Part shown: piece by piece, positions 1-29,086 of the stretch
Numbering within the stretch: position 1 is the first letter of the stretch
Layout: the number at the start of each line of letters is the position of its first letter
Assembly: GCA_965285935.1 (NCBI GenBank)
Contig: OZ260663.1
Location: forward strand, 82,646,001-82,710,000
Direction of reading: 5' to 3'
DNA from: Ophelia neglecta
Taxonomy: Eukaryota
Length of the DNA: 64,000 bases
Translations under genes and position numbers: made by a program
Notes under the pieces: generated by a model
Database searches by the model: none
What the model was told of the DNA's origin: nothing
The model's input: the letters and a program-made list of their open reading frames with translations, nothing else

Positions 1-647
1 AACACTGCGGGTATGAAGATCATGTTAATACGGTGCCTTGGGGTTCCGCCATTTCATCACTTCGGTTATAATGACCTTGCTAAATAATATGGATTCATAG
101 ACGTTTTTATGATGGATCTTATAACTTTCAAAAGGGTAGTTGTCTAAATGATAAAACATTCCAGAGTATAATCATTCACAAGTTGAATTCTCATTAAATG
201 ATCATTATTGCCGCGTTTTACAATCTCTTGCTTTAAGAGCGTGTATTCGAAGATATCGTCCTCTCAGCATCAAACACAAGGGGGGTTCTGACAAATCATT
301 GACGGTTATAGGATTGTGTATTTCAAATTATCATAGTTTTTATACGCACATTAGCTAGCTGCAGTTAATTTCAAGTCAAGGCATGCATTGTCGAAAACGC
401 GATAGAGATTAAGGACACCAAAGAGGCTTGTGAAAGGCGAAGGAGCGCATTTCATAATCGTTTGAGATACCTCAAATAAGCATGTCATTTTAATATTTTA
501 CATAAGTTCCACGATGTTTCCCTTATCACATAGCAGTTTTATTATTTGTTTGGCTCTTATGACCACGTACGTACCACACGGCTGGCCAAATATATTGAAC
601 CCCTCTTTGCGAAAAGACAGAAGATTCTAGAAAATAATATATATATA

Positions 648-825
648 CAGTGAAACCTGGAAATAAGGGACAGGCAATGGACTGTCTTAAAGTGCCCTGT
701 TTTCTAAGGTGCCCCTAATTTCAAGGTTCTTTTACATACAAAACGAAATGTTGGGTCCTAATGTGGCTGTCCCTAATTATCAGGTGCCCTTAATTTCCAG
801 GTGCCCTTTAGACCAGGTTTCACTG
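648..825. mobile_element. Tc1/mariner-pogo-type MITE
   Basis: TIRs CAGTGAAACCTGG / CCAGGTTTCACTG, TA on both flanks, internal GTGCCCT repeats. Confidence 0.85.
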
Positions 826-3800
826 TAGTTCAAATTAACCTGGTTAAAATAGTGGGTTACAAACCTGGAGATGCTTCATCATATTTTTCTGGTTGTCCAA
901 CGACTGTGTGTGTAAACGCCCAAGGTTCTGTGTTTATGTAAATGTGAAAATTGCATTGCCTTGTTATTTTCTTCTAGTTGTCAAGCAATTGTGGGTGTAA
1001 TACCTTATGTTTGTATACATAATACTGAATGTTACACCATACATGTAGTTCCACTGAATGGAACTTGTGTTTTCACTTGCTTATATTTTTTTCTTTTTGT
1101 GTAACGTTACCTTTTAATATTGTCAGAAATGACTAGAACTAAATACACAGTAAGGCTGGCATTGTTTTATCCTCTCTGCGGGCTTAGTTTCTTGCCCACC
1201 CACCCACCCCCACCCCTACCCCGCCCCTCCTCTCTGGAAGCCCTAGGAGAAACCCATCCCTTAATTGAGATTCTCTCTGAAACCACTTACGGAGAGTAAA
1301 GGCCGGGCCATATCCTTCGTGACCCTCGTCTAAATATTATTCCTAGAGCTGCTGTATAAACTAATAGTTTCCCAACACATATCACATACCAGAGACTAAC
1401 ATCATCACATAGTTTAAGAAGTTAACCCGTGTTTCTTGTAATAGTATCAACAGTATTACTTGGCTGTTTAGATTTCAGAGAAACCAGAAACGGCAAAGGC
1501 AAACATACTTGCAGCAAGTAAACATATATTGCCGATATTACTGGCACTTACAGAGGAAGAAGCGACAGATCCATGTCGATTAAAGAGTAGCTAAGAGGTA
1601 TAATTAGTTAGATTCCATGTCCCTCTTCGCGCTTAATTAGTATAGTTTAGGTTAGATTACGACAAGAAAGCGGGCATGCATGTGCATGCTAACTCAAAGC
1701 TAACTTACATTCTTGCAGAATAGCTTATATATTACATAAATATGCTGTTTGATGTTGGCCGTAGGTGTGCTGGTTGGACTACCGTTTGCTCCAATAGAAC
1801 GTTTAATCCATGCACTATACTTTTAGAAGGGGTTTCCTTTTGAAATCAACATCGATATCAGGTTAAACAATAGAAAATTTGAATCAATTTGCTTCTGCTA
1901 ATATTAGCTGTACTTAGTAACCTAACTAATTTTTTTAAATAAATATATATGCATTCTGAAGTTTAAAAAGATATTAACCTGTGACAATTTTGTGTTTGTG
2001 CCATGTGATAACAACATGGAATGTTTGCGAAGGCACAATAGACTGGTTTGTCGGAATTAATGAGAAAAGACAAGTCAGAGAAAGATTTATTCCAGCCACC
2101 ATGGTTTCCCGACATATAATGAAAACTGCGACTATGTAAGCTACATTAAAACTATGTTAGATGTCGTCTGCTGCGGCTTAACAGTCTTTGTGATAAGTCC
2201 TCAGGCAAGTATTGGTGGCGCCTAGATATCGCTGTGACGATGTGCAACAATCTGGACAGTGTATATCCCAGTACCTCCCTGAAAGATTAAATAGTCATAG
2301 AAAGTAAGAGTTTGTGAACTTTCATATTCTAGCGTTTGCAATTTGCTGATTATAAGAGCATAATACCCTGCTGAAGGTTGAAAAACTCGTAAAATAAACT
2401 TTTTTTGTGAACAGCTAGAAGTTTTCCCAAGAAGATATACACTTTACTATTTATTTTCTGAAAACACAACTTTAATCCATTCTCATTTTTGCGAATTTGT
2501 AATAGTTGCAGTTGTGGAGCAGACGACTGATGTTTGTGACTCTTCGGTTACCAGTTCTTGATTATTTTGGAGCATTTAAATGAATTTATACTATTTCCAC
2601 ATTTTTTGGTTTCTCTGCACATACTTAAGTTTGGCCAGTGTATTTTGCGAACAACGTACTACACAACGTTAAGATCGTTTATGAGGCCACGTTACTCGTG
2701 AGCTGCCGTTTACTTCAAGCCTAAGACAGGCAAATAAATCCAGTTCAACCCCAAAAAGCTCACTGCGCTAAGATCTTTTGAATAGAATGACGGTTATTGG
2801 TGCAGTTGAGAATTCTCTGTCCAAATATGTATTATGACCTTTTCCCTCAAGGTGGCTTATATTTATTACAACGCGTCGAATTTGTCAACGATGGTGTCCC
2901 ATGACTAGTGCCCAACCTCCAAACGACATAAAAAAACCGGTTGTGAACAGTTTTTACATCTTAATTCTTGTACACCGGAACTGCTAATCCAGCTCTTGTC
3001 ATTTTGTAATTCTGGCAATGATTTAATGTTTAGCAGCCCTATTATCAATTTTGACTGGAACACTGTCTTTGGCTTTGTGTACCGGAACCCTTTCCCAGAA
3101 TTGATGAACTATGAAACTCGTGTATCACAATGGATTAACAATTGAAGTGGAGAGTATACCTGAATAGGCGCATACTGAAGCAGAAAAATTAAATACAAAA
3201 TGAAGCGGATGTACGCAGACAAACATTATTATGTGTCAATCACAAAATTGTCCCATGGACAAAAAAACAGAAGGGCGGGGGGTATTCTGAGCGTGGCAAC
3301 CTGTCTTTTAGTCCGGTGTCGTTGTCCATGGAAAGAGTCACAAATATTAGTGGCGCCTGTTTTTTCAATTTGTAAATCACTGTAGCGAAATATCAGATGA
3401 AAATCTCACCCGCGGCTGTTTCATTTCATTTGTACTGATCTTCCCAAACTTATTTTCCCGCTGACAGACTCCCCTTGAATGGAGTGTTCTATAAACCACC
3501 AATTAAAAGAATCCAAGAAATCTCCGGTAAAGCTTAAGCAACATTTAGATCCTTTATCTACCCGAGGACGGGCGGTTGTTGTCGTTTTTTTCCTCTGAGT
3601 AAGATATCATCGGATGTGGTCCAAAAGGTACAGGTTTTATTTAACTTTTGGACCACTGCCGAACGACCACTGATTTCCCACATCAACTCTCCTATAATCA
3701 TACGAGTTGTATATGCTTATCGATTGCATTTAAGTGGGGTAAGAAACATTTAGGATGAAATCAAAATCTACGTGATTGGGTGTCTTGAGTTGGATTGCGT

Positions 3801-4479
3801 TCTGCTGAACAGAATGTAGTCCCATTCCAAGAAAGGAGGATATCGTGACTAGTTAGTTAGTGTGGCGGTCACGGACGTATACCTACTGGATGGCTTTGTT
3901 AGCAATACATGTAGTTGGTTATAGAATCGGTATATATCACAGTAAACGCTTCAAAGAAGAACCCAGACGAAGCCATCATAGCAACGTACTTCTTAGGTGG
4001 GGGTTATGCCGAGAGTCACCTCCTTATTGTATGCTAAAAGTGCTTTAGCTTACCGATTGTGTTGTTACTTAGGTTTTCATTTCCCACAGTTTTTATAGAA
4101 ATACCTAGCACTTTCACCATAACAAATTGACATTTAAAGAAATTCGGGCTTAAAACTTTCATATAGAAGATAAACATCAATTTAAATCTATACATTTAGA
4201 TCTGAAACCAAACAAAACTTGATGGGTATGCTAAATGTTAAAAATATAGAGATATGGGGGAGAGTGTACCGGCATGGATATATATAAAAATGAGTGTAAA
4301 TTTGTATATTGCTTAACCAATGCAGAAAGTGGAGTTTTCGCAGTATAAAGGCTTCAAACGTTGTAAATAGTTTTGAGTACAATTCAATGCTTTGGAAATA
4401 TTGCTTCTCGAAATGAAAATATTTGGTAATTTGTACATATGACCAAGTTGAGGCAGTGCCTGATGTAGTTTATATGCTC

Positions 4480-4900
4480 CTTGTCACATTATATTTGAGT
4501 TTGATGTAAAGAGCGACACCTTCTCATCGATATCTTTCAGCACATGCCAACATAAATGGTTCTGAAATGGTGCATAGTTGCGCAAAGAATGTCAACATTT
4601 GTATAGAGCGTGGTTGGCTGTCAGCAGTCTCTACCTCCGGGGTGGTGGTGTGTGAAGCGAGTTAGTAATATGGCTATTTTGTTGTGTCGCCCTAGGCCGA
4701 TTTGTGACAAACAGGGAATGCCTGGTGTAACCGATACCAGAGAATATAAAAGCTCCCCTAATTGATGACTTGGGAGAAGGTTTCTGACTTTCATATCTAA
4801 TGTTATGCACGTGTTCGTGGCCACACCGAAACTACTGTGTTATAATTGAACCCTGAGGGATCATGTGAGGGTGCGAGCTAGAGGGTAACTGATACACTAA
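4480..4900. promoter_or_regulatory. Paralogous conserved non-coding element I, left inverted copy
   Basis: 4480-4556 is 76/77 identical to the reverse complement of 52814-52890; similarity continues to about 4900. Confidence 0.7.
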
Positions 4901-5363
4901 CGGCGTTCATTTTGCAAAAATATCATAATACGTAAAAGGTGTGAGGTATTTAGAGATGAACTCCCGTAAGAACTTTGCTGGAAACATATTTAACCAATTT
5001 ATTTGATAAAAGCAATGATATACTCAGATGAAGATGCATGGTTATTTTTTGTTTACTTCAATAGTATAAGTACTAGTCATCACAATCACATATACAGGTA
5101 TATATGTAAGGATGAGATTACCTCATGAAATACAGTCAGTATGATTTGAGGGACATATAATAACTCTGTGGTGTTGATGCACTCTGATATGTTTAACATA
5201 TGTGACGATTATGTATAATACAATACGTCATAGTCATTTCACTACATTATGAACTATACAAAGTTCTTGAATGTGTACATTGATTGTGTGAATCATATTT
5301 GTTCAATGAGACCTTCAGTAGAGGTTTCTCATGTAAAGATAACAAGATTATGAGTTAAAAATA

Positions 5364-5576
5364 ACACGATTTGAATATCTAATAATCCTTTGTATGAATC
5401 TGTATTTCCGATACTGTTTTGTGACCAAGTTATAACGGCCTTGTCATGGTATCCCTTTTACGACAAATAACACCACGATTTGAATATTTAACAGTCCTTT
5501 GTATGAAATCTGACTTTACGATACTGTTCCTGTGACTCTGATTAACGGCATTGTCGTGTCACTGTCTTTACGACAT
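5364..5576. repeat. About 110-bp diverged tandem duplication
   Basis: CACGATTTGAATAT..TCCTTTGTATGAA..CGATACTGTT..TAACGGC.TTGTC..TTTACGACA twice. Confidence 0.8.
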
Positions 5577-6532
5577 TGTCATTGACACTGGGCATTAGCA
5601 ACCTTTGTCCTACAATGTTGGCGGTCTCTTTTGTGAATAGAACATGATACATATTTCATCCGTTACGATCCTGTCTGCATATTTAAAGGCAAATACTTCA
5701 ATAACAGTAATTATATATGGTCTATATGTGTGCTTTCATTGAATTTTTTGCTTAACTGCGAATAATATAGATACGAATTGGAAAGAGGAGTAATCATCAT
5801 CTTCTCAGTAATTTATTGTTGTCTTCAGAAGTCGTCACTGCTCGTCTTGTAGATACCTTGTCATTGTGAGAAATTGATACTCTGCAGGTGTGAAATAGTG
5901 TGTGTTTCAATATAATCAATCTTATGTCTTCTGTGTAATTTTCTTTGGCTGTTTGACTCGCAATCATCCATTGATAGACGGGCCAGGCCTCAGGACAGAG
6001 ACGCTTTGAACGATCCTCATTCCAGTACCTCTACGGTAAACTGTCCCGGTGATATAGGCGTTATTTCTTTCATCATCGGAAGTGTCCATGTTTCTATAAC
6101 ATAAAATTTAACAAATCGCTTTAAATAAACAGGTAATTGCAACCTTTGACTTTACGACCGATGTCGGAATGAATCGGATCCTCAAAGTTATATGTTGAAT
6201 CTGTACCTCGACCGTATTATATTGGTCTTAAAAAAAGGCAAAATGATTATGTACGTTTTGCAGCATCGTGTGATAATAGACTGGTATTGCTTGTTAACGC
6301 CTGTTACGGCCAATAAAAAAATTGAACGCTTCTGTTTATCTTGCGGGTCCCCCATATGATAACATAACATATTATGAATATCAGCAATGAAAAATTGCCT
6401 CTTTTTATCAATTCCGGATAAACATTTCCTAGACAGAGTGCAACACTTCTTAGAAGGTACTTAATTTTTATTAGCAACTTCTTACAACAATACTGATTAA
6501 AAAGCTATAGGGTTTTGACAAGCAAATGTTCG

Positions 6533-6536
<4 letters not shown>

Positions 6537-6608
<72 letters not shown>
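6537..6608. repeat. (TC)36 microsatellite
   Basis: Perfect dinucleotide run. Confidence 0.98.
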
Positions 6609-6611
<3 letters not shown>

Positions 6612-7880
6612 GAAGCGCGAGCAGTGCCATTTTTAGACTTCGGGCAAGTATTTATCACATTTCTCTGTGGAATCCAACATATCATGGTTAGAAGAGGTAT
6701 CACCAGTGTCAGTAATTTCCGCTATCTGTCAATGACAAACTGCCACCTCTCGACCGGTCATTAAACCACTTAGATAGTAGTTGTCAAACAGTGAACACAC
6801 GCCCAGGTGATCGCAGTACTTGAGACTGCATTAGTAAGTCAACAGATAGCTTCCTACGCCATTCCGGTGTATGATAGACCAGGAGATGGACACCAGATCC
6901 AAACATCTGTCCAATCCGTATCCATAACTCCATCTTGCACTTGAGTACTCTTGAGACTTAAGGACACTCAGGAGGTATAGTCTTCGGTTCCCTATTTTAA
7001 TATCCTATTGTTTTATCAAGACCATCTTGCTCTCATTCAGTGGTGACTTCTTCCAGTGACCGGAACCTATGCAGGATTATGGGTTAACTGACTTTTTCCC
7101 ACATGCGCTATTCGATGGGATAAAGTGTTATAGGGTATTAATCTCTTTGTCGTCTGCTTCAGCCGATCGTCCACCCAGGATTCATGCAGTAACTTTTCAT
7201 CTGTGGGCACCAAACAGTATTGCGAGTCGTTTTCTTTTCATGTAATCGCTTTATTGAGCATTTGCCAAAATCAAAGGCTTTAAAATCGCATGTGATGCTC
7301 TACTCCGGAACCTTTATTCAAACCGCCACCGATTAACTTTTTGACATAATGTTAAAGAAGAACAAACCTCAGGCAGCAAAGCTAGCACATACATTCTATG
7401 ATATTTCCCTTTTTAATTCCCCGTTTTATTTACTCAGATTGGCGTTAGGTCATAAACGCATTTAAGAGTAAAAGTCCTTCGAAAAAATGAAGTGTCAGAC
7501 ACGAGAACGAGAGTTTATGAACATCATATGTTAATCACGTCGAATTAAGGGTGATAGGTAATGTTGTTTATGTCGGAAATTATTTGCGACGGTTTTTGTG
7601 AACTGGGTGGCTCTAATAAATACAGAACATTGGGTTTTGCTGTTTGTCGACTCTTTACATTAATTGCTTTTTAGTGGCTTCCATAAATCCTCTATTATCG
7701 ACGATTTATTAGCGCCTCTTTTTCAGCCAGAACTGTTTATCGCGGGTTAAACAGCTTTTGCGGCGAGACGTTCTCAACAGCGCGTTCCATTCCCCTCACT
7801 GCGCATAAACTACCGGAGTGATATGCTGGCTTCTGATAACTGATAATCACAGGGCCATTGGCTTCCCTACTATACAACCT

Positions 7881-8092
7881 CAGTGGCGGATTTAGGGGTG
7901 GCCAGGGGGCCCGCCCCACCCCCCCCCCCTTGCCAAAAAGTGGGCCCAGACCAGGGCCTATTTCCGGACCTAAGCAAGATGGTTTCAGAGGGTAGGTACC
8001 CGGGACAATCCAGACATTGGCCTTGTCAACTTTGGAAAATTTGCCCCCCCCCCCCCCCCCCCTCCCTTCCTGAAATTCTGGATCCGCCACTG
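7881..8092. mobile_element. Non-autonomous DNA transposon (MITE)
   Basis: TIRs CAGTGGCGGAT / ATCCGCCACTG, flanking 5-bp direct repeat AACCT, internal poly-C tracts. Confidence 0.85.
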
Positions 8093-11000
8093 AACCTCCA
8101 GTTATTCCAAGGCAATAACCTAGAAGATGATTAAATCACATATGTATGTAATGTACCTTCTTGTATGGCGCGCACTTGTAATATCGATACGGAATTATCA
8201 TAAACAGGACTTACCTGACAAGCTATATAAAACAATAACGTAGCTTATTTTATTCCTGAAAACTAGTTTAATTGTAATTCCGAGTGTTAAGAAAATAAAG
8301 TACATTTCATTGATACATAGCAACATGGATGGAGTTGTAATTTCTGGTGTTTTCAGTTTTCATACTCTCTCTAAATCCTGGAACATCCCCTTTATTACTA
8401 GAAGGTATTGCACACATAATTGAATACTGACGAATATTTTCAACTGAGTATAGACACATATTGGTGTACTAATTTGGGGCCTATCTTCGTAAAAGCCAAC
8501 TGTTAAACCCTACAAGTTCCGAGAAGTTTTTCATTTGAGCATATCTTGGGCTAGAAATACAATTGTTTAGACAGGTACACAATGACTTATAAAGTCATTA
8601 TCATGTGTAAATTGTCATGCGAGATTTCCCTTCACGGACAAAACTGTCAGACTATCACGTATAAATTACAACACAGTTCCCTGAATTACCACAATTTCAG
8701 CTTGGAGAAAAGCCGTCAGACAGTCTTTGTTGACATGAGACTTACTCTGTCTGAATATTTCTAGATTTATGTTTCCTTACGAATTAATAGCAGGCAACAA
8801 TTAGACAAAAAACCAGGAGAAATGAATCTCTTTGCATAATCGTCTTGACAAATTCGTAAATCACGTGGTTTTATGGCACCGTCCCAGGTGTGGATGGGCC
8901 GCATTGTCGTCTGCAGGCGAAAAACGAGTATTAATACGCCGAGACCTAACATCTATCATCACTGACGAGCCGAGGGAAAAAAGAGTCGCGCCGACTGGAG
9001 ATCAGGATAATAAAAAAATCAATATGTGGATTGAGACATTAGCCCGCCTTTATTCACTGATGCAATGCCCTGTTTATCTAATTAATGACAAAATAAATAA
9101 TGATACAAACATCTGTGGAACATTCAAGATTAACTTTGTCTGGGTCTGTTATTAATAACAGAAATGATACAAATCCTAGTATGAAAGAAGCATCTAAAAA
9201 TGAATATTCATATATTCAACATTCGATGCACAATAATCCTGTTTGTCATGAGCACGGCAGAAGTAGGAGGGCATGTACGCTAAAAATGCGACTAGGGCAA
9301 AACTATGTAGGAGAGCATACGGTTGTTTCAAGTGCCCGAATATAATAGTCAGCTTGCTTGATGTACAGTCTTAGACACGAGAAACATTCCGCTAAGCCGC
9401 GAAGTAAGCCGCATGGTAACCGCGGCAGTATAGGCAGACGATTTGTGTGAGCTTAGGGGTGCGTTTATTTGGGGTGTGTTTCTTAGGCGTGCCTTTCTAA
9501 TGGTTTCTCGTGAGCGTTGATGAGACACTGAGAGTTGCAGAAGATTACTCATCATACAGCTTCCCTCCTAAAAGAATCTGATAGTTGATACCTAGTGTAC
9601 AATTCAGGGAACGTTCATTACCTCGCTCCAATAAACCAGACAGGACCCGTCAGCTGCAGGCCCCCAAATAACAAACTAGAAGATACAGTGGACATTGAGG
9701 CACATCAGTCTTGGGTCTTGTTTTTTCAGGTTATCAATAATGGTTTAATGAGCTCATTGCCGTTATGGAACAACAGTCCATCACACATAGGGAAAAGATA
9801 AATTTCACAGAAAGTCTTTACAATCGAGATTAAACCACTATCTTTTGGAATAAATAAGGATTTTATATATCCTTTCAAAACAATTTGGTTTGTCAGCCAA
9901 CCATGAGTGCTTTGAGTGAAATTATATGCTGTATTTGTTACAGTGGGACCGAAGTTCCCACCCGAGGGAGGAATCGCTTACTCACATAAATTAACTTCTA
10001 ATGTCTGACACATGTTTCGACAAATTCGAGATAAAAATAGAGGGTTTGTAAAACGATATCGCCTAAAACAAAACGTGTCCTCTTAAGTTTGTACCATAAT
10101 AGCTCCCGATAGACTGATCCTTTAAATGAACTATAAGCACACTGAGTGCAATTTATACTACCTATAGTGCACCCAATGGTTACACAGTTTCGTTGATTAT
10201 AGAACATTTCAGTGTATATGATGTTACTCTAACAATTTGTGGTGGGCTGCTAGTCAGATTAGTTAAAACAACACACTAAAAAATGACAGCTACAACCTAA
10301 GGATTGGCCATAAACTACCACGGTTTGAAGCCTAGATGTTTGTAGACAATATAATAATTACTCCTTTATCACGATTTATGACGTGGTGTTGTTTTCCAGC
10401 CCATGGCGGATCAACACAAATTTTCGTTTCTAGGTTAAATTGAAGTAATTGACTGGCTGGAGCCCTGGAGTTTCGTTTCGTTCTGCAAGTTGATATCTTT
10501 TCTAATATTGTAGGTTACAGCCGGGTCAAGGACCACCCTATGATGACAACAATAGTGGATTTGCTTAGCTATAACGAGGACCAAAACAATTTAACGTTGT
10601 TTCTTTCAATGTGGGCGTGAGTATTATACAGCTCGAGAAGATCAGTTGGGTTGATACACAAACAAGATTGGCCATAATAATATGTATGTTTTGTCTGGGC
10701 AGACAGATAAAACAAAAGGCTACGTCACTAATGGACTGTACTCTCAGGTAAGCTATATATGTATTAGAGATCACACACGGTTGAAAGAGTGGAAATGAAG
10801 ATGTCATTGTTAACAAAATATATAAGTCAGAAATACATTCAACTTAGAAACACTCCCCAGAAATATTTGGATACTTCTGCAATCAGTAAGAACTGATCGC
10901 AGTTATGTTAGACTCCAAGTTGCGCTGTGTCGCTTCCACTCAGCATCCAATCCGTCAAAGATTGTAATAATGTCGAGGCTTCTCTGTCTAACATTCAGAA

Positions 11001-11494
11001 TGGTCTCTAAAAGGGTGGCAATCTGATAATTGAAGATCGACAGACGACCTTTGGGTGGTCTCTGGCGGGATATACCAAGTTAAACCCGACTATAAACGGC
11101 TTACAGACGACTTAAGGTCAAAGGTTGACAGTTATAATACAACAATCTCTGGCGGAAAATCCCAAATTCGTATCCGAAAACCCGGCTAATGCTTATTATC
11201 CGACAATAAATACCAACTTAAGTAAATAGTTTGTTTGGTGCGCCTTGGGTTAGGTATTAGGTTTTATTCAACCTATCTGTAAGCCATTTGTGGGAATCTA
11301 CTTTTTTACCCAATGGTAAAAATATTTGCCTAATTCGTCACACAAAAAATTCAGAGGAATACAAAATCTATATATATATATATATAAAGCTTCAATTGCC
11401 TTTTCTGTGGAAATCTGATCAAAGGCGAGATCATTAAGTGTAGCCATTATATATTTCTTCTATAACTGGAATTTCGTACATATATGTATATATA

Positions 11495-11597
11495 GGCGCT
11501 TTTACTTTCTTCTAGACACCGGGGCAAACGATTCATCTGTTTCGTGCAGACGGATGAATCGTCTGCCCGAGTCCAGAAGAAAGTCAATTGCACCTGT
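11495..11597. repeat. About 100-bp imperfect palindrome (hairpin; MITE-like)
   Basis: ACTTTCTTCTAGAC..GGGCAAACGATTCATCTGT pairs with ACGGATGAATCGTCTGCCC..GTCCAGAAGAAAGT. Confidence 0.75.
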
Positions 11598-12509
11598 ATC
11601 TAAAAGGGTGGCAATCTGCTGATTGAAGATCGACGGTTGTACTGGTTCACTAAGCATTTAAAGCCTTTTTTGCACTATTCACACTGTGCAATAACAAATG
11701 ATCCTCTTTTTTAATAGCAATGGTTGAAAGAAATCGGTTAGTAGTTCAATTTATAAGACCACGAGGTAACGATTCGAAGCCTAATTTGATTTGCAGATGG
11801 TAATCTGATGAAGGACGTTCAGACGGTTGGGTGTAGTATTTATGGCTCTGGCCTCAAATGGCGCTCTGGCGGGTAATTTCATTAAGACCGGTAAATAGTT
11901 ATAATCAGGTTAGCTTACAGTCTCGAGAGGCAAAAAAATTACACGTCACAAATAATAAGGTTTAAATCAGCAAACAGCAGGCGTATTGTTGTATGTTGAT
12001 TAGTCTTATTGCACATTGCTGACTAAACACCGTTAGACATTGAAACAAAAAATTAAAATTCATTTATAACAAGAATTGTCCTATACTCTTTCATTCAAAC
12101 TGTACTTTTCATTTAGCATTGGAAACGTTCTAGTTTTGTCATGCCAACTTCTCTTTAGAAACAATATCCATCTGTAATGTAAAATGACCACCACATTCCT
12201 TGATTTCTATTTGTATCAGAGCCGAGAATAGCAAGAGCAGTATATGCCTTATAGCATCCGCTTCGAAATGATAACCTTTATGTTTATAAAGTTTCATATT
12301 GGTTGGTGAATTGCTAAAGACTAGCTAGTAAAAATGATAATGTGCATATTACTTAACTGTGAACTAAGCAATTCGCTGTTTAACCGCGGGTGTCAACTTG
12401 AAATATCTAAGAACCTGACCAAGTGGTCCTTTAGAATCATGCATGGGCTATCGTGATTCAAATTTATCAACTGACCCCCAGCTTAATGAACTTTGAATAT
12501 GCCCTTCAT

Positions 12510-12930
12510 ATTGATTGAGTCATAACTACGATTGTCTGAAGCCAATCTTAATTTGCTGTCCGTCGGGGTTGAGCAATATATGACCCGCTCACCCCCGCTG
12601 TCCTCATATCTCTGGATCCTAACTCAGATACCTCCCCGGGCAACCAATCACCCAGTCCCTGCTAACAATCTCCTGATACAGTCTGCCAACATTATGACCG
12701 CTCTTCGGGATTTTATCGGTACTTGGCCTGATGAAGCAGACGTGATGGTGGCATGTCTTGCTAGACGATGGGTGAAATTTGTCACTCCTGTTTTATTAGT
12801 CTGTTTATTTCAGAGTTCAGAGTGGTAGGTCTCGGGAACAAGGTTAAGATTACTAACAAGGACCTCATAATTCACATTCTGTCACAGACAGATAAGACCC
12901 ATAGGCAGTGAAAAATTAACCGTTAATATT
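12510..12930. promoter_or_regulatory. Element B, inverted copy
   Basis: CCGCTCTTCGG..ACTTGGCCTGAT.AAGC..TGAAATTTGTCACTC..GGTTAAGAT..TAACAAGG.CCTC.TAATTCACATT.TGTCAC matches the reverse complement of 63.4-63.6k. Confidence 0.65.
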
Positions 12931-16000: not shown

Positions 16001-19000
16001 GCCTAATAAAAAAAAACACCATCCAAAACACAGACACCTGTCAATGTGAGAGATGTATTGTTAAATATCTAAGTAAAGAAATATAACAAATTATTTAGAA
16101 GAAAACGTTTTAGCGTGATATTAATTATGAGTTACATGAGTAATATATGCTTATCGCGAAGACCGGCTAGACCTTTATCAATAATGCAATAACATGTTTT
16201 TCAGCTGAGTATGACGTTTGTGAGTAAAAACCAAATAACACAATCCAAGAACAAAGCCGGCCAAAGTGTATGTTTACAATACTTGAAAAATCGCGGTTGT
16301 CATTATCCTCCGTTGACTAAATTGGCCCAGACTTTCATATTGGAAAATTCAAATTTTGTTCAGTTTGGCCACTTTTTTTGCGATCTTAGTAACTTAATGA
16401 TTCATTTAAAGCAAACCAAACAAACAATTGAAATAAGAATAGAGGGAAGGGCCTTGTCATCGGCTGTTTTGATTGAGCGTGACGGAGTCAATCATGCGGG
16501 TAATAAATGGCGTCTGCTTAGATGTGCACAGCGGTTTGGATGGCAGTTGTTTAATATTGATATTCCGCCTTTAAACACCCGGTGAAATGGCGGCGTGTGC
16601 CACATTATGGAATCATGGAACCTCCTGGAAAGGTCGCGGGTCAATCAATCGAATGGTGTCCATCTGCAGGGCACCAGAAAGCTATTCGTTCACACGATAG
16701 GCGGGCATTATAAAATACCTTATGTTTACCTTCCACTTGCCAAGTCCAAAGTCCAAATTTACTCTTAACAAGTAATAACCATAAAATTGTAGGCCTGCCT
16801 TAATTCCTATATGATTGTCCTATCACTTCCTCTGCTTATACAATAAAAGCATGTGACATTGCAAAGCTAAGTAACGTGTAACCCAATCCTTAAGGTTTTT
16901 AACAACCACAACTTTGCTTAAAAAACTTGACATGGACGGGGCAGACGAGCATTGTATAATGACCATAATTATTGCTGATGAAAGAACACTCGTGATTTCG
17001 ATGTTTCTCTCAGTGAAACATGACACGCGAATATATTATATATATCTGGTGAGGGCCATTACAATAAGCAACGCTCGCGTCAATAGCTCTACCTCCTGAG
17101 TTATCACATCAGTTTCAGTGAATACAGCTATTATTTAAGTTCTTGTTTCGCCTTCTCCAAGGTATCTATTTGATGTCTCATTAATCTTCTGCTTGAAGTA
17201 AACTACAGAGTTCTTCTCCCTCCTCTTCGTAAGATGATCTTTTGTCGTAGGGCGGAGTCCCCATGTAAATAGGACCCACGATTCAACCTTTTTTATACTG
17301 AAGAAGAAAGTTGATGAAAAAGCGCTCCTTTGCAAATTCCTAACAATATAGACAGATGGGAAAATTACAAGGTACATCTTCCTCTGGCTAAACTGCCAAA
17401 TAGCTCAGCTGGGGGTCCAATCGTCTTCAGACACCGAGACGGCAAATTCATTGTAATTTACTCTCAAACTGGCGACTTTAAACAATTTTTTCTGTCACCA
17501 ATCACAGATGTTACTTGAAGGGTTTGACTTGGTACCCTTTTCAACAGATATCCAACACAGTAGGTGAAAACGACGAAAGCTGGACAAGGTGTCACGCCCT
17601 CAAGCAGCAGACGACATTAGAAGCTCGACTTCAGGAAGAATGGCAATCACGCTGTGATGACAACCACGATTTACCCTTACCCGAGAAATGTCAGTGATTG
17701 GTCTGATTGATGTCAGGAGAAATTAACTCGAACTCGCCGTTTGATACATGATTATTAAGCTTTATTTGCACAGCAGGGGTGTATCAGTGTTTTCTTGTGG
17801 CCTATTATAGACCCGTGATCAGCATCCGTCCGCGGAGTGAGTTGTGATGAATACATCCCGAGACAAATGAACTTATAGACTAGTTTTGGTTGAACCGGAG
17901 AGGTCACATTTCAATGAAGGCATTTAGTACAATTCAAAAGCCTTCAAAGAGTTAAGAAAATCAGAGCAATTATCCCGGGCAGAAATCTTAAACAAGGTTG
18001 ATTAGAAACACGGGCTGAGAGTACAATTTATTACATTGCAATGGAATAGTTGAAATATTTAAAATTCAAACATGAGGGACAAAATTATAAGCAGATGAAT
18101 ATATAGAATGTATATCTATAGAGCGCACACGATTCGGTGTACCCGATGTTTCAAGTTCCATATCTCAGCTATTATCAATCGTAGTATCCTTAAAATAAGT
18201 TACTTGCTATGATAAAAAATGGCCTATACACTTAACTTACGCCACAATTTCTTTAGGCCACGAGTCTCCGGTAAAAAGGAGGGATTTAGACATAGAATTC
18301 GGAGCTGATGGCGAACAAACCGAATGACCTGACCGAGCCAGAAATGTCTATTGTATTAAATTGACATATGCTTGAAATAGTTTGAGATATGCACTGCTAG
18401 TAGATGCCACAGATCAATTTATGCAAATGCCGGGGGTTGGGTGTACTTTGAGACTCCCCAAGCTGCTACTCATTGACAGGCCATAAAGACAAAACTATGG
18501 TACTCTTTGACGCTAGGTAAAATACTGAATTGGGCTGAGATTATTAGTACATTGGTATCAATGACAAAGATTGAGGTATCGCTTCTCCCCGATGTAGATT
18601 TGCCCTGCAAACTTGTGTCAGGCACCTGATGAAGTGTTCCACTTAAAATAGCCTATAACATTGTTAAAGCTATGCCTATAAACATATAAAGGAAAGGAGT
18701 TTCAATATACCGGCTCTAAGCCGCTGACAGAATAGTGTGGCATAGCCCTCTCCCCCCTGTCACTACAGTTCATCACCTAATACATCAAATCTCGCGGTAT
18801 TGTCCCCTATTTGTGGTATAATCTCGGCAATACCCACAAGAAGGGGATTAAAAGGCGGCAAGCTGATAATTTGACGTCGGCAGACGACCTAAGGCTGAAT
18901 ACTTGTAAGATTTCAGCAATCCAGGTGGCCACTGAACATGATGATACGTCACGTGGTTACCACTAAAACATGGCAATAATAATTCAAAGTATAATTCAAA

Positions 19001-20840
19001 GTTGGTCTTTGGAAAATATATATTTACAAATTTACACGGACGTATTTCACATATTGAAGTAACAACAAAGTAATCAGTTACAGTTAAATACGTATTTCAC
19101 TAGACCAATGAGGATTGGAGTCCTAATGTGTATAGATACCCTCCTAATAAATGATCTTCGATAAAAATATTATAATAATTTAATAATATTATATCAATGA
19201 TATACATCTATATAAAAATCTCGCGTGAAATCTCGAGATTTTTCCCCTATTGCTCATCTTCCAAGTTTAACTAAGGCATTTTTCACCTAAATGTTTTGTC
19301 AGAATGTGTTGTGAATTTCGTCCATACATAGATTGTGTCAGGAAAATCTGCGATTACAAGGCGCAGTCGGGGCTGAGAATTAAATTAATAGCGGCGTATC
19401 TGCAGTAAATTGAGGTTTTACTGAAGGCTATTGAGTTGTAACTATAGCTGTGAATGCCTTCAACACAATATTGATTAACTTCAGTATATATACGGATCCA
19501 AAAATGGAGTCATTACACAGAATCTTACTCCACCTGATGGCGTGATCGCGAACTCTAGCTAGTGGTGAGTTCTTCCTCTTTCGAGTAATGGCGGCATTTC
19601 CTTCGAAATGTGAAGATTACTCAGCCAGCATTAAACGATTCGATTCGAAGGCCAATAAGGCCATTTTAGAAAATAAGGTATGCGTAGAGTTTAACGAGAC
19701 TGCAGTCGTTTAAGGTGATCCACTTACCAAAGGTGATACCACGTGAAACTTTATAATAAAACAAATCTAATTAAAATAAGTCCTTGAGAAGGAGGTGAGC
19801 AGCGATTAAACGTGGCCAAAAGCAAACAGTCACAGATCTAAACTTTGGTACTAAACTGTTCTCGCTTGTTAACCAAGTGGCTTCAAAACGATAGACTACT
19901 TGTAATTTGTAATTTGTCGGAGGCAGTCACCTCCTTCTCCGTTTGACGGCAAATTATTTTCAGTCGGATAACATCTTCGCCTTTTTCGATTTGCTCCGCG
20001 GTCGGAAGATGGCAGTCCTGCATCTGATAGGGGGCAACTCGAGTCTCAGGGGTTTACCACTTCGTGAGAGCAATTTCAACTTGCTAAAGTGTCCATAGCT
20101 GCAGTAATAGCTCGCCGAATAAAGTGCTTATCAGCGCCACCGTGAATACAAAAAGGCCGGAGATGGCGAGAGGGGATTTGCTGGGAGCTGATATCGGTTG
20201 TGGTTATTAGGCGAACTTCGAGCCGGATCAGTATATCTGGGGTATCTATAATTGGCGAGTTGGTCGCCGACACCTGGGTCTGAGATTGAACCACAGATAG
20301 GGGTGGGTTGCATGCCCGTGGCACTGCCTCCTCCTTCCCTACCATCCCCTGTCACCTCCCTATCTCAAATCACCATCGACCTTTGCTGAATTGTAGATCA
20401 GAGCAAGGGCAATAAATACATATCATATTGTCTGATTGGGGGCCCATCGGAATCAACATCCATAAGACTGAGTTATTACTCAGCGCACATCCCCGCCTTA
20501 CGCTGATCACTGTACTGAGAATGACCTCAGACCATCGTTGTTAAAGTATAATGGGAGTCTCCGTGTTTGAATGTCCACCAAGGCCCCGATGACAAACACT
20601 AACCCTTAACAGAGAGCCCCACTGTCTTATAACTCTATAAAGTATATAGTAAGTCAGCCGGACTATATACAGATATTCTAGTAGGCTATATGGGATTCGT
20701 CCTCGAAATCCTGGTTAGTCACGTCCCTCGGTATAAAAATACCGATATATTATGTCCCCCCGTCTTTTAACTATAGGCAGGGTACTGACTCAATGGGACT
20801 TGATAAAATGTTACATCCAGGGTCGCAATATCCCTAACTA

Positions 20841-21009
20841 CCGTGAAACCTGCTAATAAAGGCCGCCCCAGGGAATGAAAAATACTGGCCTGATTTTAGA
20901 GACGGTCTGGTTATTTAAAAGTGAAAACATAAACATTGTGTTCATAAGTGTTGTCTCAATCGACAGAGTGGTCTTAATGTAGAGGTGATCTTTAAAGCAC
21001 GTTTCACTG
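20841..21009. mobile_element. Related, degenerate pogo-type MITE
   Basis: Imperfect TIRs CCGTGAAACCTGCT / AGCACGTTTCACTG, TA on the left flank, similar length to 648-825. Confidence 0.7.
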
Positions 21010-24000
21010 CATGTATGTACACCAAAATACCACTGGAATTAAACATATCAAAGTGTTTGTATAAGCTTTATAACACCAATAAAAGGGCACTTTTTAGCCA
21101 ATTAGTCGTGCTTTAAGAGCTACAATCTTATTAAGTCATTAACAAGGATACAACAGCTAGGCCTAGTTTGTATAAAATTATGCTTATCCATCCTTTACGG
21201 AAGAAAACTTGAAAATTTCTACGGCACTACCCGAACTCATTTGACTTTATTCCCTTTGCCTTGTGTTCATCCCCACGTCGGCGACTGACTCTAGGTTTAC
21301 ATGCAACGAGGTGCAGAACACACAATTATCCAACCCGTTACATTGTGCCGGGCAGAGCAGCTTTTTTTAATTGGCGCCAACCAAGCCTTAATGGATTCAC
21401 CTTCCATCCATTTGGGAATAAGATTAATTACACAATTAATAATTAGACATCCAAGTAAACCTGATTTTTAATATATAATTAAAAGCCATGCTAAAAGAGA
21501 GGGTATTTAGGTTATACGATATTTCAATGCGGTAGGGAAATATAAATTACAGGTGCGAAATATTACAACTCGTCACATAGCATATTATAAAACAAGACTA
21601 TCAGAAAATATCGTTTTTCATTTTAATGTGTCAAAAAGGCAAACGTGTCAGCATAAAAACTGTGAATAATGACTGAAAACTTGATAATACAAGGTTTTTA
21701 AACATCATAAAATGTATCCAATATGGCGGCTTTCGGTCCAATTTCCGGCTATCAGTAGTGTATGATTAGCTGTCATATCATCATAAAACCACCTAGGCAT
21801 CAAGTATCCCAGCGTCTGTGGCTATCGGGGTGGTCCGATCTAGGCAGAGGGATCTTTTACACCAAAGTGAATTGAAACTTTATTTCCCCTTTCAAAACCG
21901 TTTAACGCTTATCTGGAAGCAGCCTAAACAGGTGTGTACCCAATACAAAACAGTCCAGGCGCGAAATAAGCGTCCACGGATATAACCATTTGTCTGACAT
22001 TTAACAAAAGGCACCATTTAAACGTCACCCACCGTACTGATGGAAGGCGGATAAGCTAAAATTTTAATAGATGAAGTCAAAACTGGCGAGGCACTTCACC
22101 TATCGTATTTATACATGTCCCTTACCGCGGAGAATAAAACATTTAGGTGCATATTATCTGATTAAGGTTGGTATTTTAATTGAGCTATGTTGATTGATGG
22201 TTACACTGTAATTGTCGTATTTTGATTAGATTATGACAAGGTTAATTAGTTCTATCAAAGATGCGTACAACAAGTATTATTGATGATATAAGCATCTCAG
22301 GCGCATTTAAGTCTATGGTACAACTCAATTGATACTTGGTACACTTGACAAATATTGCTGATTAATGAATTTCATTGTTAAAAAACACATAGTTTTCCAT
22401 CCTATTTTAAAAGAGAAATTTATCAGCTGCATCAACATTTTTTTTTTCAAAATGGCAGGAATAAATGAACATAAAAGTTTACAGGAATATTTCACTATCC
22501 TGCATTCTATATATTTTATATTTATATTTGCTGTCAAATGCTTGCCAAGCTAGAATGCGTTTATACGATACTCCGCCTTTTGTTTAAAATCTCTTGTGGC
22601 TTTAATAACAAACCAATAAGTTACAAGCTTAAAGAATTCATAGTTTATTCGTTCAAATACAACAGGCGACATGGGCATATATAAGTCTTGAATACAAAGA
22701 ACGAGACGAGCCAGTTAATAAGAATGCAGACGACTTACACCGCTTTTAACTTAAATCAGTAAAGTTCTTAAACGATGGTAAATACAACACAAGTCTGCTC
22801 AGCTGTCGATGACTGTCAATACTAATTTATCATTCATGTTCTGCCGAGTACTGATGCTAAACAGTTTCCTCAACATGGCAGCATCGAGTCGTTAACGTCC
22901 CGGCATCCACCAGAACGAATCACATAACAATGTTTGACCAAGCGACCATCTGTTCCACTAATTCTAATGACAAATTAGCGAAGCCAACGTGTTGTGTTTC
23001 TGGATTTCTATATGCCTTTTAAATGAAATAGGTACAACAGACGGTGTTCAGATTGGCTTCCAAGGTGATTTGAAATAAGCCATCGCCAATCACCGACTTT
23101 CTGGAGGCTAAATATAAATGTTATCAGCTGCTCCCGTGGTCAACGAAACAGGAAAGTCGAAAGTCGAATGACCTGGTATTTGTACATGAATATCTCTGCG
23201 TGTTTTGCCAACACAAATAACCAAATGCAAAAGCTCTACAATCTTGCTATAGTGCTATATTGATGTTTATTTATTTTAAAAATTGAAATAATACGCCTAT
23301 AAGTTAAATTTGGTCCAATGGTCCAAAGATTTAAATATTTCTTCAACCAAAAGGGTACCCATGAGTCGGATCGGCTTTAAGTATTTTCAGTCATTGTAAC
23401 ATCTATTACTATCGGCCTAATGTGTGAATGCGGGAGAAAAAGCTGTAGCCTGCTTATTCTTGAAGGTACTTGCTTCACTTTAATTTATTCTTCCATAAAT
23501 AAATGCAATTCAACTTAACTGTATTGATAAAAGTCCCTGCTGTCCCCTTTTCCTTTTCAACAATAATTTATATCTTCTGTTTTATCAATATACTTAGTTT
23601 ACTTCAAAAACCTATTTAACGTTATGGGCTACTAATCAGCGAATTAAAAGCAATAAAATGGCTAAAAAATACTAAATGTTTTGAGCAAAGCCTTCGGATT
23701 CTACTAAATCATTGAAGCAGTTAACCGTTTTTAAATCCGCGCCAGGATCGATCACCCACCGACTGCTGGGTTATAACAAATGACCAGCTATCTCATTTCC
23801 CGCCCTAGCCGACACTATCGTCTGTCTCCTAATAAATCACTGTCGTGTAAAATTCTCTATTTGTCTTTCACTGGTCTTAATCAAGCTTTAAACAGTGTAA
23901 CAACGAAATAGGGAGGACACGAGAGTTCAATAGCCTATCAGTATGAGAGCTTAGCCGCTCCTACATATCACCCCACGCTAATCCGCAGTCTCCAACGAGC

Positions 24001-26130: not shown

Positions 26131-26528
26131 TCAATCCAGAATTGGCGAGTCTAACCGTTTTCTGTGCTGGCTGGCCATGGCAGCAGACGACAGATACGGA
26201 TGGTACCGATGAGCATACAAACTGGACGGATATATATTTCCCGCTCCAACATTTCCTGGAGAATCCTGGGAGGCGTAAAATCCAGCTGTGGGGCCAGCTG
26301 CTAGACTAGAAGGTAGCGTCCCGGAAGTAAATGGGTTCAAGGTGAAGGTCGGCAGTGTCCCCGCGGTGCTGCTGAGGCCGTACAGACTATTGTACATGCT
26401 GTACATACTACGGTCTGGGAGGTAGGCGCTGTGAGGGAGCTGCATCAAACGACCAGCTGTCACAGGGCGCCAAACTGGAAACGGAGACTGTAATCCACCG
26501 GCTCCAAGTCTTTCTAGACCATTCTCAT
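26131..26528 (-). CDS. TBX20: Tbx20 terminal coding exon 8 (S/P/Y-rich C-terminus)
   Basis: TATTTCAG acceptor, in frame with ORF 26131..26463, contains HRYHPY, ends at TGA 26133-26131; total CDS 1464 nt is divisible by 3. Confidence 0.9.
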
Positions 26529-27495
26529 CTGAAATAAATATGGCGATTTAATTCAAAAACAGTTTTGCTGGTAGGGCTAACGCTAACCACTACTTTGGGC
26601 ATTCAAAAATAAAACACATGAGGCAAGGGCGGAAGCGCGGGGGGGGGGGGGGGGGGTTACGAGTTCCCAATACTTTTTTTTAGTAATGCATGAGCTTTTG
26701 TACATTTCTAGGTCCAGGCCTGAATACAGCTTTAATCAATGACCAGCAAATAACACAATACCACTATATAACCTGATGTATAAATCTCCTTTTCAATGAA
26801 AAAAGGTCCCCTTGTTCTAACAAATAGGCCACACTGCCATGAAGATTGGCTTAGCCTTGGCCCGAATGACTTATTTATAACGATTGGTTCCCCAGTGAAG
26901 CGGGCTGCAGTCTGAAGGCCTGCTCACAGAATTGATGGTTACAGATCTGTGGTTGCAGAGACATGTAATTTAACGCGTCACTTGGCCGCTTATAGCCACT
27001 CGAACAATTAAAGTCAAGTGGACGACAAGTGGGGAGAGGACGAAATAAGATCAATATTTGTACTTGGTACTCAAATCTCTTTATTTTATAACGACTATTC
27101 ATTGTCCCAATTATATATATTTGTCCCAATTATAAAGGTTTTACGGATTTATTTAACCCACCGCAGACTCATAAAATGTACATAAACACACACATTTACA
27201 GATGGGAATATGAACTTCAGAAAGATTGAGGACAATGGTATATGTCAATTTAGAGAATGCTACCCACAACACCCTAGAGGAGTTCCCAATTTATTATACA
27301 AATGGCAGAGGCTCAGAAAGTACACACACAGAGCATCAAAAACACACTATTTTAAAAGCAACACCACAATGTGAAAATGCCTACTTTTTACGGGTTTAAA
27401 GTACAAGATGAAATATGTACTTATAGTTAAATTAAAGCTTAAACGTTTAGAAAATAACATTTGGTTTTCATAGAGGAGACACATAGTTTACACAC

Positions 27496-27608
27496 CTTTG
27501 CAGGTTCCTAGGTGCGCCTTAATCGACTCCTCGAATTCCGTGTCAGTGTAGGAGCGTAGCGGCGAGCGTGCGTACGTGTGCTGCTGCATCAGACTCTCCA
27601 TGCTGTCC
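27496..27608 (-). CDS. TBX20: Tbx20 coding exon 7
   Basis: TTACAG| DSMESLMQQHTYARSPLRSYTDTEFEESIKAHLGTCK |GTGTGT; resembles human ESVESLIQKHSYARSPIRTY; 113 nt keeps frame with exon 8. Confidence 0.92.
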
Positions 27609-28245: not shown

Positions 28246-28322
28246 CTCTCTAGTTCGGTCAGCCGTGAGGAGTCCCGGAAACCCTTAGCGAACGGGTTGC
28301 TGTCTATTTTCAATTTGGTGAT
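28246..28322 (-). CDS. TBX20: Tbx20 coding exon 6 (end of T-box)
   Basis: TTTCTTAG| ITKLKIDSNPFAKGFRDSSRLTELER |GTAAGT; 77 nt; GFRDSSRLT is typical of Tbx20. Confidence 0.97.
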
Positions 28323-28877: not shown

Positions 28878-29086
28878 CTGTAAGGAAACAATGTTAATAA
28901 ATCAATTAATCAAGAAAATAATATTATATAATCAACCAATCAAGATTAATTGGCGTTACTCGTTTTTAAACATACCTAATCTAAGGTCTGGTGGTGGACA
29001 ATATGATACTGTATCTTAATACAGACTATATGCAAACGATTCCAATATTTATTTCACTTATGATGTTATTATATGATTATTCTCAC

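What the first reader, a model, noticed from the sequence alone, without database searches (positions are those of the whole stretch)
88..12930. Second, inverted ghost copy on the 3' side of Tbx20 that shares the exon loss
Seen: reverse-complement matches in strict mirror order: 88-212/56.06-56.16k, 2030-2293/55.12-55.36k, weak 2.7-3.17k/54.45-54.83k, 3395-3635/53.60-53.83k, 4480-4900/52.49-52.89k, 6655-6870/48.43-48.70k, 12510-12930/element B. The intron-1 element here is closer to the right ghost (41/45 identical, 2249-2293 vs 55121-55165) than to the live intron, and again no exons lie between the blocks. Inference: the already exon-less regulatory block was itself duplicated and inverted, so the live gene is bracketed by mirror-image enhancer arrays that were multiplied without the gene.
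Basis: partly seen in the sequence, partly recalled or inferred. Interest (0 to 1): 0.88.

Follow-up and report, generated by a model that had tools for sequence, protein, structure and literature searches.

The report
Inverted exon-less Tbx20 relic in cluster
The left end of this window holds a real, inverted, exon-free relic of a Tbx20-type gene, but it is one of at least seven decayed copies in a 300-kb cluster of duplicated Tbx20 loci and was copied together with a gene, not as a free-standing enhancer block.

Summary
The mirror-order matches are largely real. Five of the seven claimed pairs are far above chance (z 22-103, or E 1e-9 to 1e-55). Two are not: 88-212 and 2.7-3.17k. No T-box exon trace lies between the blocks.

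The window is the middle of a Tbx20 cluster of at least 320 kb on contig C5. The cluster has three intact genes: A, B (in the window) and C. It has four copies of one exon-less "ghost" (G1-G4) and three other relics (D, E, G5).

The left ghost (G3, window about 1.9-6.0k) is not a direct copy of the right ghost (G2, 51.8-55.6k). Element N groups G3 with G4, which lies 3' of gene C outside the window. It groups G2 with G1, which lies 3' of gene A. Support is 100%.

Window -2.0..22.1k is a 10-block inverted copy of w 101.5..80.9k. It continues into a truncated gene copy (E) that mirrors gene C. The ghosts were therefore multiplied with genes, not alone.

The blocks are confined to this locus and show no coding or RNA-structure signal. 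They are conserved very unevenly: the N core is 76/78 identical between G2 and G3, while its flanks are near random. Enhancer function is plausible but untested. Gene conversion is a live rival.

The parts
1934..2385 (+). K' of left ghost G3: copy of the intron-1 element K of the Tbx20 genes
   Evidence: Matches G2 55107-55277 (E 2e-19) and gene C w121880-122137 (E 1e-21). Seven-copy alignment with invariant motifs.
3317..3685 (+). M of G3: ghost-specific block with five copies in the cluster
   Evidence: Matches w98510-98874 at 67% (E 6e-36), 53597-53872, and w-102.3k and -96.8k.
4407..4872 (+). N of G3; its core at 4482-4660 is the best conserved piece
   Evidence: Four copies, all in this cluster. 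G3-G4 75% over 449 bp, G3-G2 73% over 374 bp. Core 76/78 identical to G2. Tree (G3,G4)|(G1,G2) 100%.
5740..6001 (+). O of G3
   Evidence: Matches w95251-95513 at 72% (E 2e-33) and weakly 51768-51909. A weak O-like piece lies 3' of gene A at w-133.67k.
6707..6901 (+). Q: element repeated within the cluster, usually next to 'element B'
   Evidence: Copies at w-131.9k (90%), 73.1k (83%), -116.8k, 48.5k and 63.9k only.
12479..12898 (+). 'Element B': repeat confined to this locus, not a dispersed transposon
   Evidence: Best copy w88854-89273 (83-95%). All genome-wide hits lie in C5:82.47-82.74 Mb.
17027..17928 (+). Colinear block of the inverted arm (E unit against gene C's flank)
   Evidence: Matches w84260-85102 inverted, 63% over 919 bp, E 4e-67.
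21511..22118 (+). Z: last block of the inverted arm; the arm ends here, 4 kb from gene B's last exon
   Evidence: Matches w80929-81506 inverted at 76% (E 3e-105) and weakly 45190-45546.
20715..21073 (.). True dispersed repeat of about 180 bp; other copies at 499-836 and 10848-11163
   Evidence: 1074 first-look candidates across many contigs. Family of 16 copies within the 320 kb.
26134..34337 (-). Live Tbx20-type gene B. Open stretches holding exons: 1 (34011-34337), 2 (32704-32892), 3 (29357-29569), 4 (29072-29284), 5 (28698-28901), 6 (28245-28322), last (26134-26547). Intron elements: K (33228-33427) and L (29942-30222).
   Evidence: PF00907 hits. Open exon stretches. pN/pS about 0.13 against A and C.
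38610..39297 (-). P: upstream element of gene B, five copies in the cluster
   Evidence: Matches 58998-59428, w67972-68753, w-126.8k and w-110.8k.
51768..55592 (-). Right ghost G2: K' (55090-55592), L' (54480-54940), M (53582-53882), N (52482-52954), O-like (51768-51909)
   Evidence: Colinear with G1 (w-105.3..-100.2k) at 66-85% and with G3.
45190..45546 (-). Z-like end block of the D unit
   Evidence: Matches 21528-21897 inverted, 58% over 378 bp, E 1e-10.

Best explanation
**Cluster.** The window lies inside a lineage-specific cluster of at least 320 kb. The cluster was built by repeated tandem and inverted segmental duplication of a whole Tbx20 locus. The proto-unit runs P, exon 1, K, exon 2, L, exons 3 to last, N, O, Q, element B.

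**Copies.** Three copies kept open exons under purifying selection: A, B and C. The others lost their exons, mainly through deletions that compacted the locus.
- One old relic (K'-L'-M-N-O) was later copied along with neighbouring genes. It now exists four times: G1 and G2 form one pair, G3 and G4 the other.
- Three further relics are D, E and G5.

**The finding.** It describes G3. G3 is part of a roughly 49-kb arm (w -51.6k to 22.1k, net of a 23.5-kb satellite inside it). This arm is an inverted copy of gene C plus its 3' flank (w 119.4k to 80.9k). Its mirror match to the right ghost G2 is the older, cousin-level relationship.

**Shown here:** the map, the pairings, the absence of exons, the restriction of the blocks to this locus, and their lack of coding or RNA-structure signal.

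**Inferred (about 40%):** the surviving blocks are cis-regulatory modules kept by selection because they still serve the live Tbx20 genes.
For: - **Three T-box loci on C5.** Found by PF00907. All exons are open in A, B and C. pS is 0.26-0.30 against pN 0.03-0.04.
- **Map.** A 320-kb self-comparison and element map give 57 families whose order recurs unit by unit.
- **Colinear chains.** The E flank against the C flank gives 10 blocks and 1897 bits. E-left against C gives 13 blocks and 2892 bits. The A flank against D gives 23 blocks and 4650 bits. G3 against G2 gives only 554 bits. Reversed-subject controls give 0 hits.
- **N tree.** (G3,G4)|(G1,G2) at 100%. G3 and G4 share indels in N, as do G1 and G2.
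- **Ghosts are colinear with a whole locus.** P, K and L occur in order, and weak N-like and O-like pieces lie 3' of gene A in the same order.
- **Recurrent exon loss by deletion.** In D, the K-to-fam6 distance is 581 bp against 1059 bp in A, and there is no exon 2. In E, the L-to-exon-6 distance is about 0.7 kb against 3.0 kb, and exons 3-5 are missing.
- **Blocks occur only in this cluster genome-wide**.
- **No codon periodicity.** Indels are not in multiples of three. There are no Pfam domains and no Rfam hit. Fold z-scores are near 0.
- **Uneven conservation.** The N core is 76/78 identical between G2 and G3. The N flanks are 53-58% alike between the two ghost pairs. K and L have invariant motif blocks across 7 copies.
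Against: - The order of units is not that of one simple inversion. Left to right on the plus strand the units run D-like then C-like. A single mirror copy of C plus D would give the reverse order. Several events or rearrangements must be assumed.
- Identity along the E/C arms drops from about 80-92% left of the satellite to about 55-83% right of it. The arm may therefore be composite, or partly homogenised by gene conversion.
- The K tree does not resolve where G3 sits.
- Long-range orientation rests on the assembly alone. The reads check used short contigs that tile 20.6-26.5k but do not bridge it.
- Constraint on the blocks is inferred within one genome. There is no cross-species, chromatin or expression evidence.
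- Gene conversion is demonstrably active in the cluster: A and C are a mosaic of 97-98% and 75-86% segments.
Confidence: 0.7

Rival explanations
1. An already exon-less regulatory block (the right ghost G2) was itself duplicated and inverted, without a gene, to give the left ghost. Gene B is thereby bracketed by a private mirror pair of enhancer arrays.
For: Strict mirror order of K', M, N, O, Q and element B between 2.1-14.1k and 55.3-45.2k. The N core is 76/78 identical between G2 and G3. The K segment is 41/45 identical.
Against: The N tree and shared indels pair G3 with G4 and G2 with G1. The chain to gene C's flank is more than three times stronger than the chain to G2. The arm runs on into a truncated gene copy, E, that keeps exon 6. 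G3 lacks L', which G2 has.
Confidence: 0.08
2. Neutral debris. The blocks are ordinary leftovers of old local duplications with no regulatory role. They stay similar because gene conversion between cluster copies keeps refreshing small islands of homology, and because deletions happened to spare them.
For: Gene conversion is evident between A, C and E: exons 3-4, 6 and last are 96-98% alike amid 75-86% neighbours. G2 is a mosaic in N, resembling G3 up to alignment column 417 and G1 after it (permutation p<0.0005). G1's N core carries an 11-bp deletion and G4's many changes, so not every copy is kept. This scan judged a similar 'exon-stripped twin' elsewhere in this genome to be ordinary (s1-733641; not checked here).
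Against: Conversion should preserve exons at least as well as introns, yet exons are missing from all seven relics while L survives in G1, G2, E and G5 and K in G1, G2, G3, D and weakly G5. The invariant positions form short motif-like blocks shared by up to 7 copies, including the live genes. Distances in the N core are additive on a star tree with zero-length G2 and G3 branches, which equally fits constraint.
Confidence: 0.3
3. Assembly artefact. The inverted copy comes from a mis-joined or duplicated haplotype contig.
For: A 23.5-kb satellite lies just left of the window, and the region is rich in duplications, which are hard to assemble.
Against: The copies are only 55-92% alike, while alleles in other runs differ by about 1%. 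There is no N in 320 kb. Short-read contigs from three runs tile 20.6-26.5k at even single-copy depth, and X1 matches exactly.
Confidence: 0.03
4. The blocks are exons of an unannotated transcript (protein-coding or long non-coding), or pieces of a transposon family.
For: They are discrete blocks of 200-900 bp with sharp edges. No RNA data could be found to exclude transcription.
Against: Mismatches show no codon phase and indels are not in threes, whereas a real exon used as control gives p=3e-6. There are no Pfam domains in the six ORFs of 90 aa or more in 1-23k, no Rfam family and no stable fold. No copies occur outside this cluster apart from one 180-bp dispersed repeat.
Confidence: 0.05

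Closest known systems
Birth-and-death tandem gene clusters with relic copies (for example the PDZ-RhoGEF array noted earlier in this same genome, s1-733641)
   Same: Repeated local duplication. A few copies stay intact under purifying selection and the others decay. Gene conversion acts between members.
   Different: The relics here contain no recognisable exon debris at all, apart from exon 6 in E. They do keep the same non-coding blocks, so they are not classical pseudogenes.
Duplicated conserved non-coding elements (dCNEs) around paralogous developmental genes in vertebrates (CONDOR, PMC2020477; Fugu regulatory subfunctionalisation, PMC1896008)
   Same: Paralogous non-coding blocks of 100-500 bp are kept in order near a developmental transcription-factor gene, while the DNA between them is unalignable.
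   Different: dCNEs are defined by cross-species conservation and sit beside retained paralogous genes after whole-genome duplication. Here conservation is shown only within one genome, the duplications are local, and most copies have lost their gene.
Shadow or redundant enhancers (own knowledge, not tested)
   Same: Several similar regulatory modules lie within reach of one developmental gene.
   Different: No evidence of activity here. The copies arose by whole-locus duplication rather than by local enhancer duplication.
Tandem Tbx20 paralogues such as Drosophila midline/H15 (own knowledge); two TBX20-like genes listed in Acropora (PMC12360431)
   Same: Lineage-specific duplication of Tbx20.
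   Different: Three genes plus at least seven relics, in both orientations, in an invertebrate described in earlier scan notes as lophotrochozoan (not verified here).

Membership tests
T-box gene (Pfam PF00907) | T-box DNA-binding domain over the curated cut-off | tested here: met
   Gene B exons at C5:82674710-82678778 score 33.8-70.8 bits against a cut-off of 26. Genes A and C score likewise.
Tbx20 subfamily | Orthology to Tbx20 in a T-box family tree | not tested
No reference T-box proteins were on hand, and exons may not be joined for a search. An atlas search with exon 4 gave no usable hit.
Inverted segmental duplication | Several colinear reverse-complement blocks, above chance | tested here: met
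   6-10 colinear blocks against 0 hits in the reversed-subject control. z is 22-103 against shuffles.
   N tree (G3,G4)|(G1,G2) 100%. Quartet sites 28 against 14 against 5. In K, (G1,G2) has 99-100% support and G3 lies outside that pair.
Classical (unprocessed) pseudogene | Recognisable decayed exons with stops or frameshifts | tested here: not met
   tblastn with each exon of A, B and C finds nothing better than E 0.3 in G1-G4 or D. Only E keeps exon 6, and G5 a doubtful trace.
Transposable element or dispersed repeat | Copies scattered over the genome | tested here: not met
   K', M, N, O, Q, element B and Z hit only C5:82.47-82.77 Mb. The exception is the 180-bp repeat at 20836-21020.
Conserved non-coding element or enhancer | Conservation across species | not testable with these tools
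   No genome of a related animal was available.
Conserved non-coding element or enhancer | Regulatory activity | not testable with these tools
   No RNA or chromatin runs were found.
Conserved non-coding element or enhancer | Slower change than neighbouring DNA between paralogous copies | tested here: met
   N core 76-97% alike among copies against 53-58% in its flanks between the two ghost pairs. Only 9-34% of unit length is alignable. Gene conversion could mimic this.
Structured RNA gene | Rfam match, or a stable conserved fold with covariation | tested here: not met
   No Rfam hit. N core z is 0.2 to 1.0, K z is -2.0. The K consensus fold is -6.3 kcal/mol with an unfavourable covariation term.

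The most novel reading that the evidence does not exclude
Dead Tbx20 paralogues persist as exon-free cassettes of cis-regulatory modules that selection keeps because they still act on the surviving genes. The two relics flanking gene B (G2 and G3) would then be its working 5' and 3' enhancer sets. That would explain why their N cores are 76/78 identical while the other two copies drift. This would be enhancer retention after gene death, readable within a single genome.
Probability: 0.25. Interest if true: 0.75.

Novelty: new member of a known kind. Interest (0 to 1): 0.45.

Why it matters
Tbx20 is a conserved developmental regulator that is single-copy in many animals. A cluster with three live genes and at least seven relics at different stages of decay is a natural series. 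It shows which parts of a developmental locus outlast the gene. If the retained blocks prove functional, the locus would show that regulatory DNA of lost paralogues can be inherited by the survivors. It would also offer ready-made candidate enhancers (K, L, M, N) defined by paralogue footprinting alone. If they are not functional, the locus is a clear example of how gene conversion and deletion can imitate conserved non-coding elements.

Tried and rejected
- The claimed pairs 88-212/56.06-56.16k and 2.7-3.17k/54.45-54.83k are at chance level.
- I looked for K' and L' in G4 (w98.8-100.2k) and for L' in G3 (2300-3400). None was found, best E 0.06-0.5.
- I looked for M, N and O inside genes A, B, C and E. 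Only weak N-like and O-like pieces 3' of gene A turned up.
- Rfam on the whole window gave nothing. RNA folds of the N and K cores show no signal.
- Pfam on six ORFs in 1-23k gave nothing.
- The atlas search with exon 4 gave no usable hit.
- A single-breakpoint max-chi-square test for G3 against G2 and G4 was not significant (p=0.15). Conversion between G2 and G3 is therefore neither shown nor excluded.
- The sequencing-run search found only three DNA runs of one coded sample and no RNA. Their short contigs confirm local sequence but cannot test long-range orientation.
- Two literature searches for Tbx20 duplications in invertebrates found nothing specific to this case.


Full report
**Coordinates.** The window is G000:C5:82646001-82710000. 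I write w for window coordinates. Negative values lie to the left of the window and values above 64000 to the right. I fetched 156 kb on the left and 100 kb on the right and analysed the joined 320 kb. It contains no N.

**Observation.** A self-comparison of the window shows reverse-complement matches in mirror order:
- 2136-2306/55107-55277
- 3358-3638/53597-53872
- 4417-4777/52583-52950 (E 3e-55)
- 5824-5969/51768-51909
- 6713-6856/48445-48592
- 12765-12896/47961-48091
- 14066-14140/45191-45267

A sensitive search adds 21528-21897/45190-45546. Two pairs are at chance level: 88-212/56.06-56.16k (z 1.9) and 2.7-3.17k/54.45-54.83k (z -0.3). The 41/45 identity is correct, but the same 45 bases are 40/45 identical to gene C's K and 37/45 to gene B's.

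**Context.** PF00907 finds three T-box loci within 270 kb on C5:
- gene A, w -147.8..-137.0k, plus strand
- gene B, window 26.1-34.3k, minus strand
- gene C, w 115.6-123.3k, minus strand

All three have open exons 1-6 and an open last exon. Over exons 4-5, pS is 0.26-0.30 and pN 0.03-0.04. A and C are a mosaic of 97-98% and 75-86% segments, which is a sign of gene conversion.

An element map of the 320 kb gives 57 families. It shows a recurring order: P, exon 1, K, exon 2, L, exons 3 to last, weak N and O, Q, element B. Besides the three genes there are:
- four copies of one compact, exon-free ghost, with order P'-K'-(L')-M-N-(O): G1 at w -105.3..-100.2k (+), G2 at window 55.6..51.8k (-), G3 at window 1.9-6.0k (+), and G4 at w 98.9..95.3k (-)
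- relic D (w 74-80.6k), which keeps a promoter-proximal block, fam4, K and fam6
- relic E (w -51.6..-49.8k), which keeps L, an intact exon 6 and a conserved block that lies beside exon 7 in the live genes
- relic G5 (w -126.8..-117.2k), which keeps P, a weak K, L, a decayed exon-6 region and the same exon-7-adjacent block

**Where the left ghost belongs.** Window -2.0..22.1k is colinear, inverted, with w 101.5..80.9k, the 3' flank of gene C. The chain has 10 blocks, 5.2 kb and 1897 bits. Its chain to the right ghost's unit has 6 blocks, 1.4 kb and 554 bits.

Left of a 23.5-kb, 484-bp-period satellite, the same arm continues. There, w -51.6..-28.3k mirrors w 119.4..101.7k, that is gene C itself and its proximal flank, in 13 blocks at 65-92%. 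Likewise the 3' flank of gene A (with G1) mirrors w 74.9..49.8k (with G2) in 23 blocks. Relic D is the gutted counterpart of gene A, and (A,D) group together in the K tree.

Element N gives (G3,G4)|(G1,G2) with 100% bootstrap and 28 informative sites against 14 and 5. G3 and G4 share indels, as do G1 and G2. In K, (G1,G2) is supported at 99-100%. G3 sits unresolved beside gene C and that pair.

The in-window mirror pair are therefore cousins. Each ghost was copied together with a gene: A+G1, D+G2, E+G3, C+G4.

**Exon loss.** tblastn with every exon peptide of A, B and C, each on its own, finds nothing better than E 0.3 in G1-G4 or D. The ghosts share a compacted layout. K' to L' is about 250 bp in G1 and G2 against 2.6 kb in gene A. 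L' to N is 1.5 kb against 8.2 kb. A single early exon loss is thus the simplest reading. Later losses were independent: G3 lacks L', and G4 lacks both K' and L'. D and E show the same process again, by deletion.

**Nature of the blocks.**
- They occur nowhere else in the 762-Mb genome. The exception is one 180-bp dispersed repeat.
- They show no codon phase and no three-base indels, while a control exon gives p = 3e-6.
- There are no Pfam domains, no Rfam match and no stable or covarying fold.
- K and L carry short invariant motif blocks across seven copies, including the live genes. Examples are two CAGGTG boxes in L and GGCGCC in K.
- Conservation is very uneven. The N core is 76/78 identical between G2 and G3 and 63-78% in other pairs. 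N's flanks are 53-58% alike between the two ghost pairs. Only 9-34% of each unit aligns at all.

This pattern fits selective constraint. It also fits gene conversion between G2 and G3. The distances cannot tell the two apart, and the breakpoint tests are mixed.

**Mechanism.** Shown: whole-locus segmental duplication in both orientations, gene conversion, and recurrent deletion of exons. Inferred: the surviving blocks are regulatory modules retained for the live genes (about 40%), against neutral islands maintained by conversion (about 30%).

**Artefact check.** The copies are 55-92% alike, whereas alleles differ by about 1%. Short-read contigs of three runs tile 20.6-26.5k at even depth. Long-range orientation was not independently tested.

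**Limits.**
- The organism is coded. Earlier scan notes call it a lophotrochozoan invertebrate, which I did not verify.
- No RNA runs were found.
- No related genome was available.

**Earlier scan notes.** The scan had already noted the right ghost, the N element and the prediction that the array continues beyond the window. My results confirm those observations. They revise the model built on them.

Noticed in passing
w -27.0k to -3.45k (C5:82,619,000-82,642,550; loci L013-L016): A 23.5-kb satellite with a 484-bp unit, about 49 copies, 97% alike. It is flanked by ~500-bp inverted repeats (w -28193..-27699 against -2747..-2245, 92%). It interrupts the E unit exactly where gene C's flank is continuous, so it is an insertion or expansion.
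   Followed up: partly
w -88.8..-78.8k against -65.5..-54.7k (loci L007-L011): A separate local palindrome: nine colinear inverted blocks at 69-87% identity around a spacer of about 13 kb, lying between the A and E units.
   Followed up: no
gene A (w -147.8..-137.0k) against gene C (w 115.6-123.3k): Mosaic identity. Exons 3-4, 6 and last are 97-98% alike, while exon 1, K, exon 2, L and exon 5 are 75-86%. Relic E's exon-6 block is 96% alike to both. This points to recent gene conversion across 260 kb and between opposite orientations.
   Followed up: partly
window 24737-25428: A very high-copy element with a poly-A tail (word depth in the thousands). Contigs of runs X2 and X3 skip 24915-25428 and have 165 other letters there, so the insertion is polymorphic in the sample.
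   Followed up: no
w 74.0-80.6k (loci L017-L018): Relic D is the counterpart of gene A. It keeps a promoter-proximal block, fam4, K and an intron-2 block, but has no detectable exon 1 or 2, and the whole gene body is deleted (3.3 kb in place of about 12 kb).
   Followed up: partly
w -51.6..-49.8k (locus L011): Relic E keeps L, an intact exon 6 (25 of 25 aligned residues as in gene A) and a conserved block that lies beside exon 7 in the live genes. It lacks exons 1-5 and the last exon.
   Followed up: partly
window 43322-43872: A degenerate tandem array of 26/78-bp units (about 74-78% matches) upstream of gene B. A 55-bp G-rich repeat lies at 60637-60756. TC and AG microsatellites at 6537-6608 and 41784-41835 produce a spurious inverted match.
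   Followed up: no
C5:82474397-82480471 (left of the fetched region): Further copies of element B and of window 20058-20287. The cluster therefore extends beyond w -156k, and more units may exist there.
   Followed up: no
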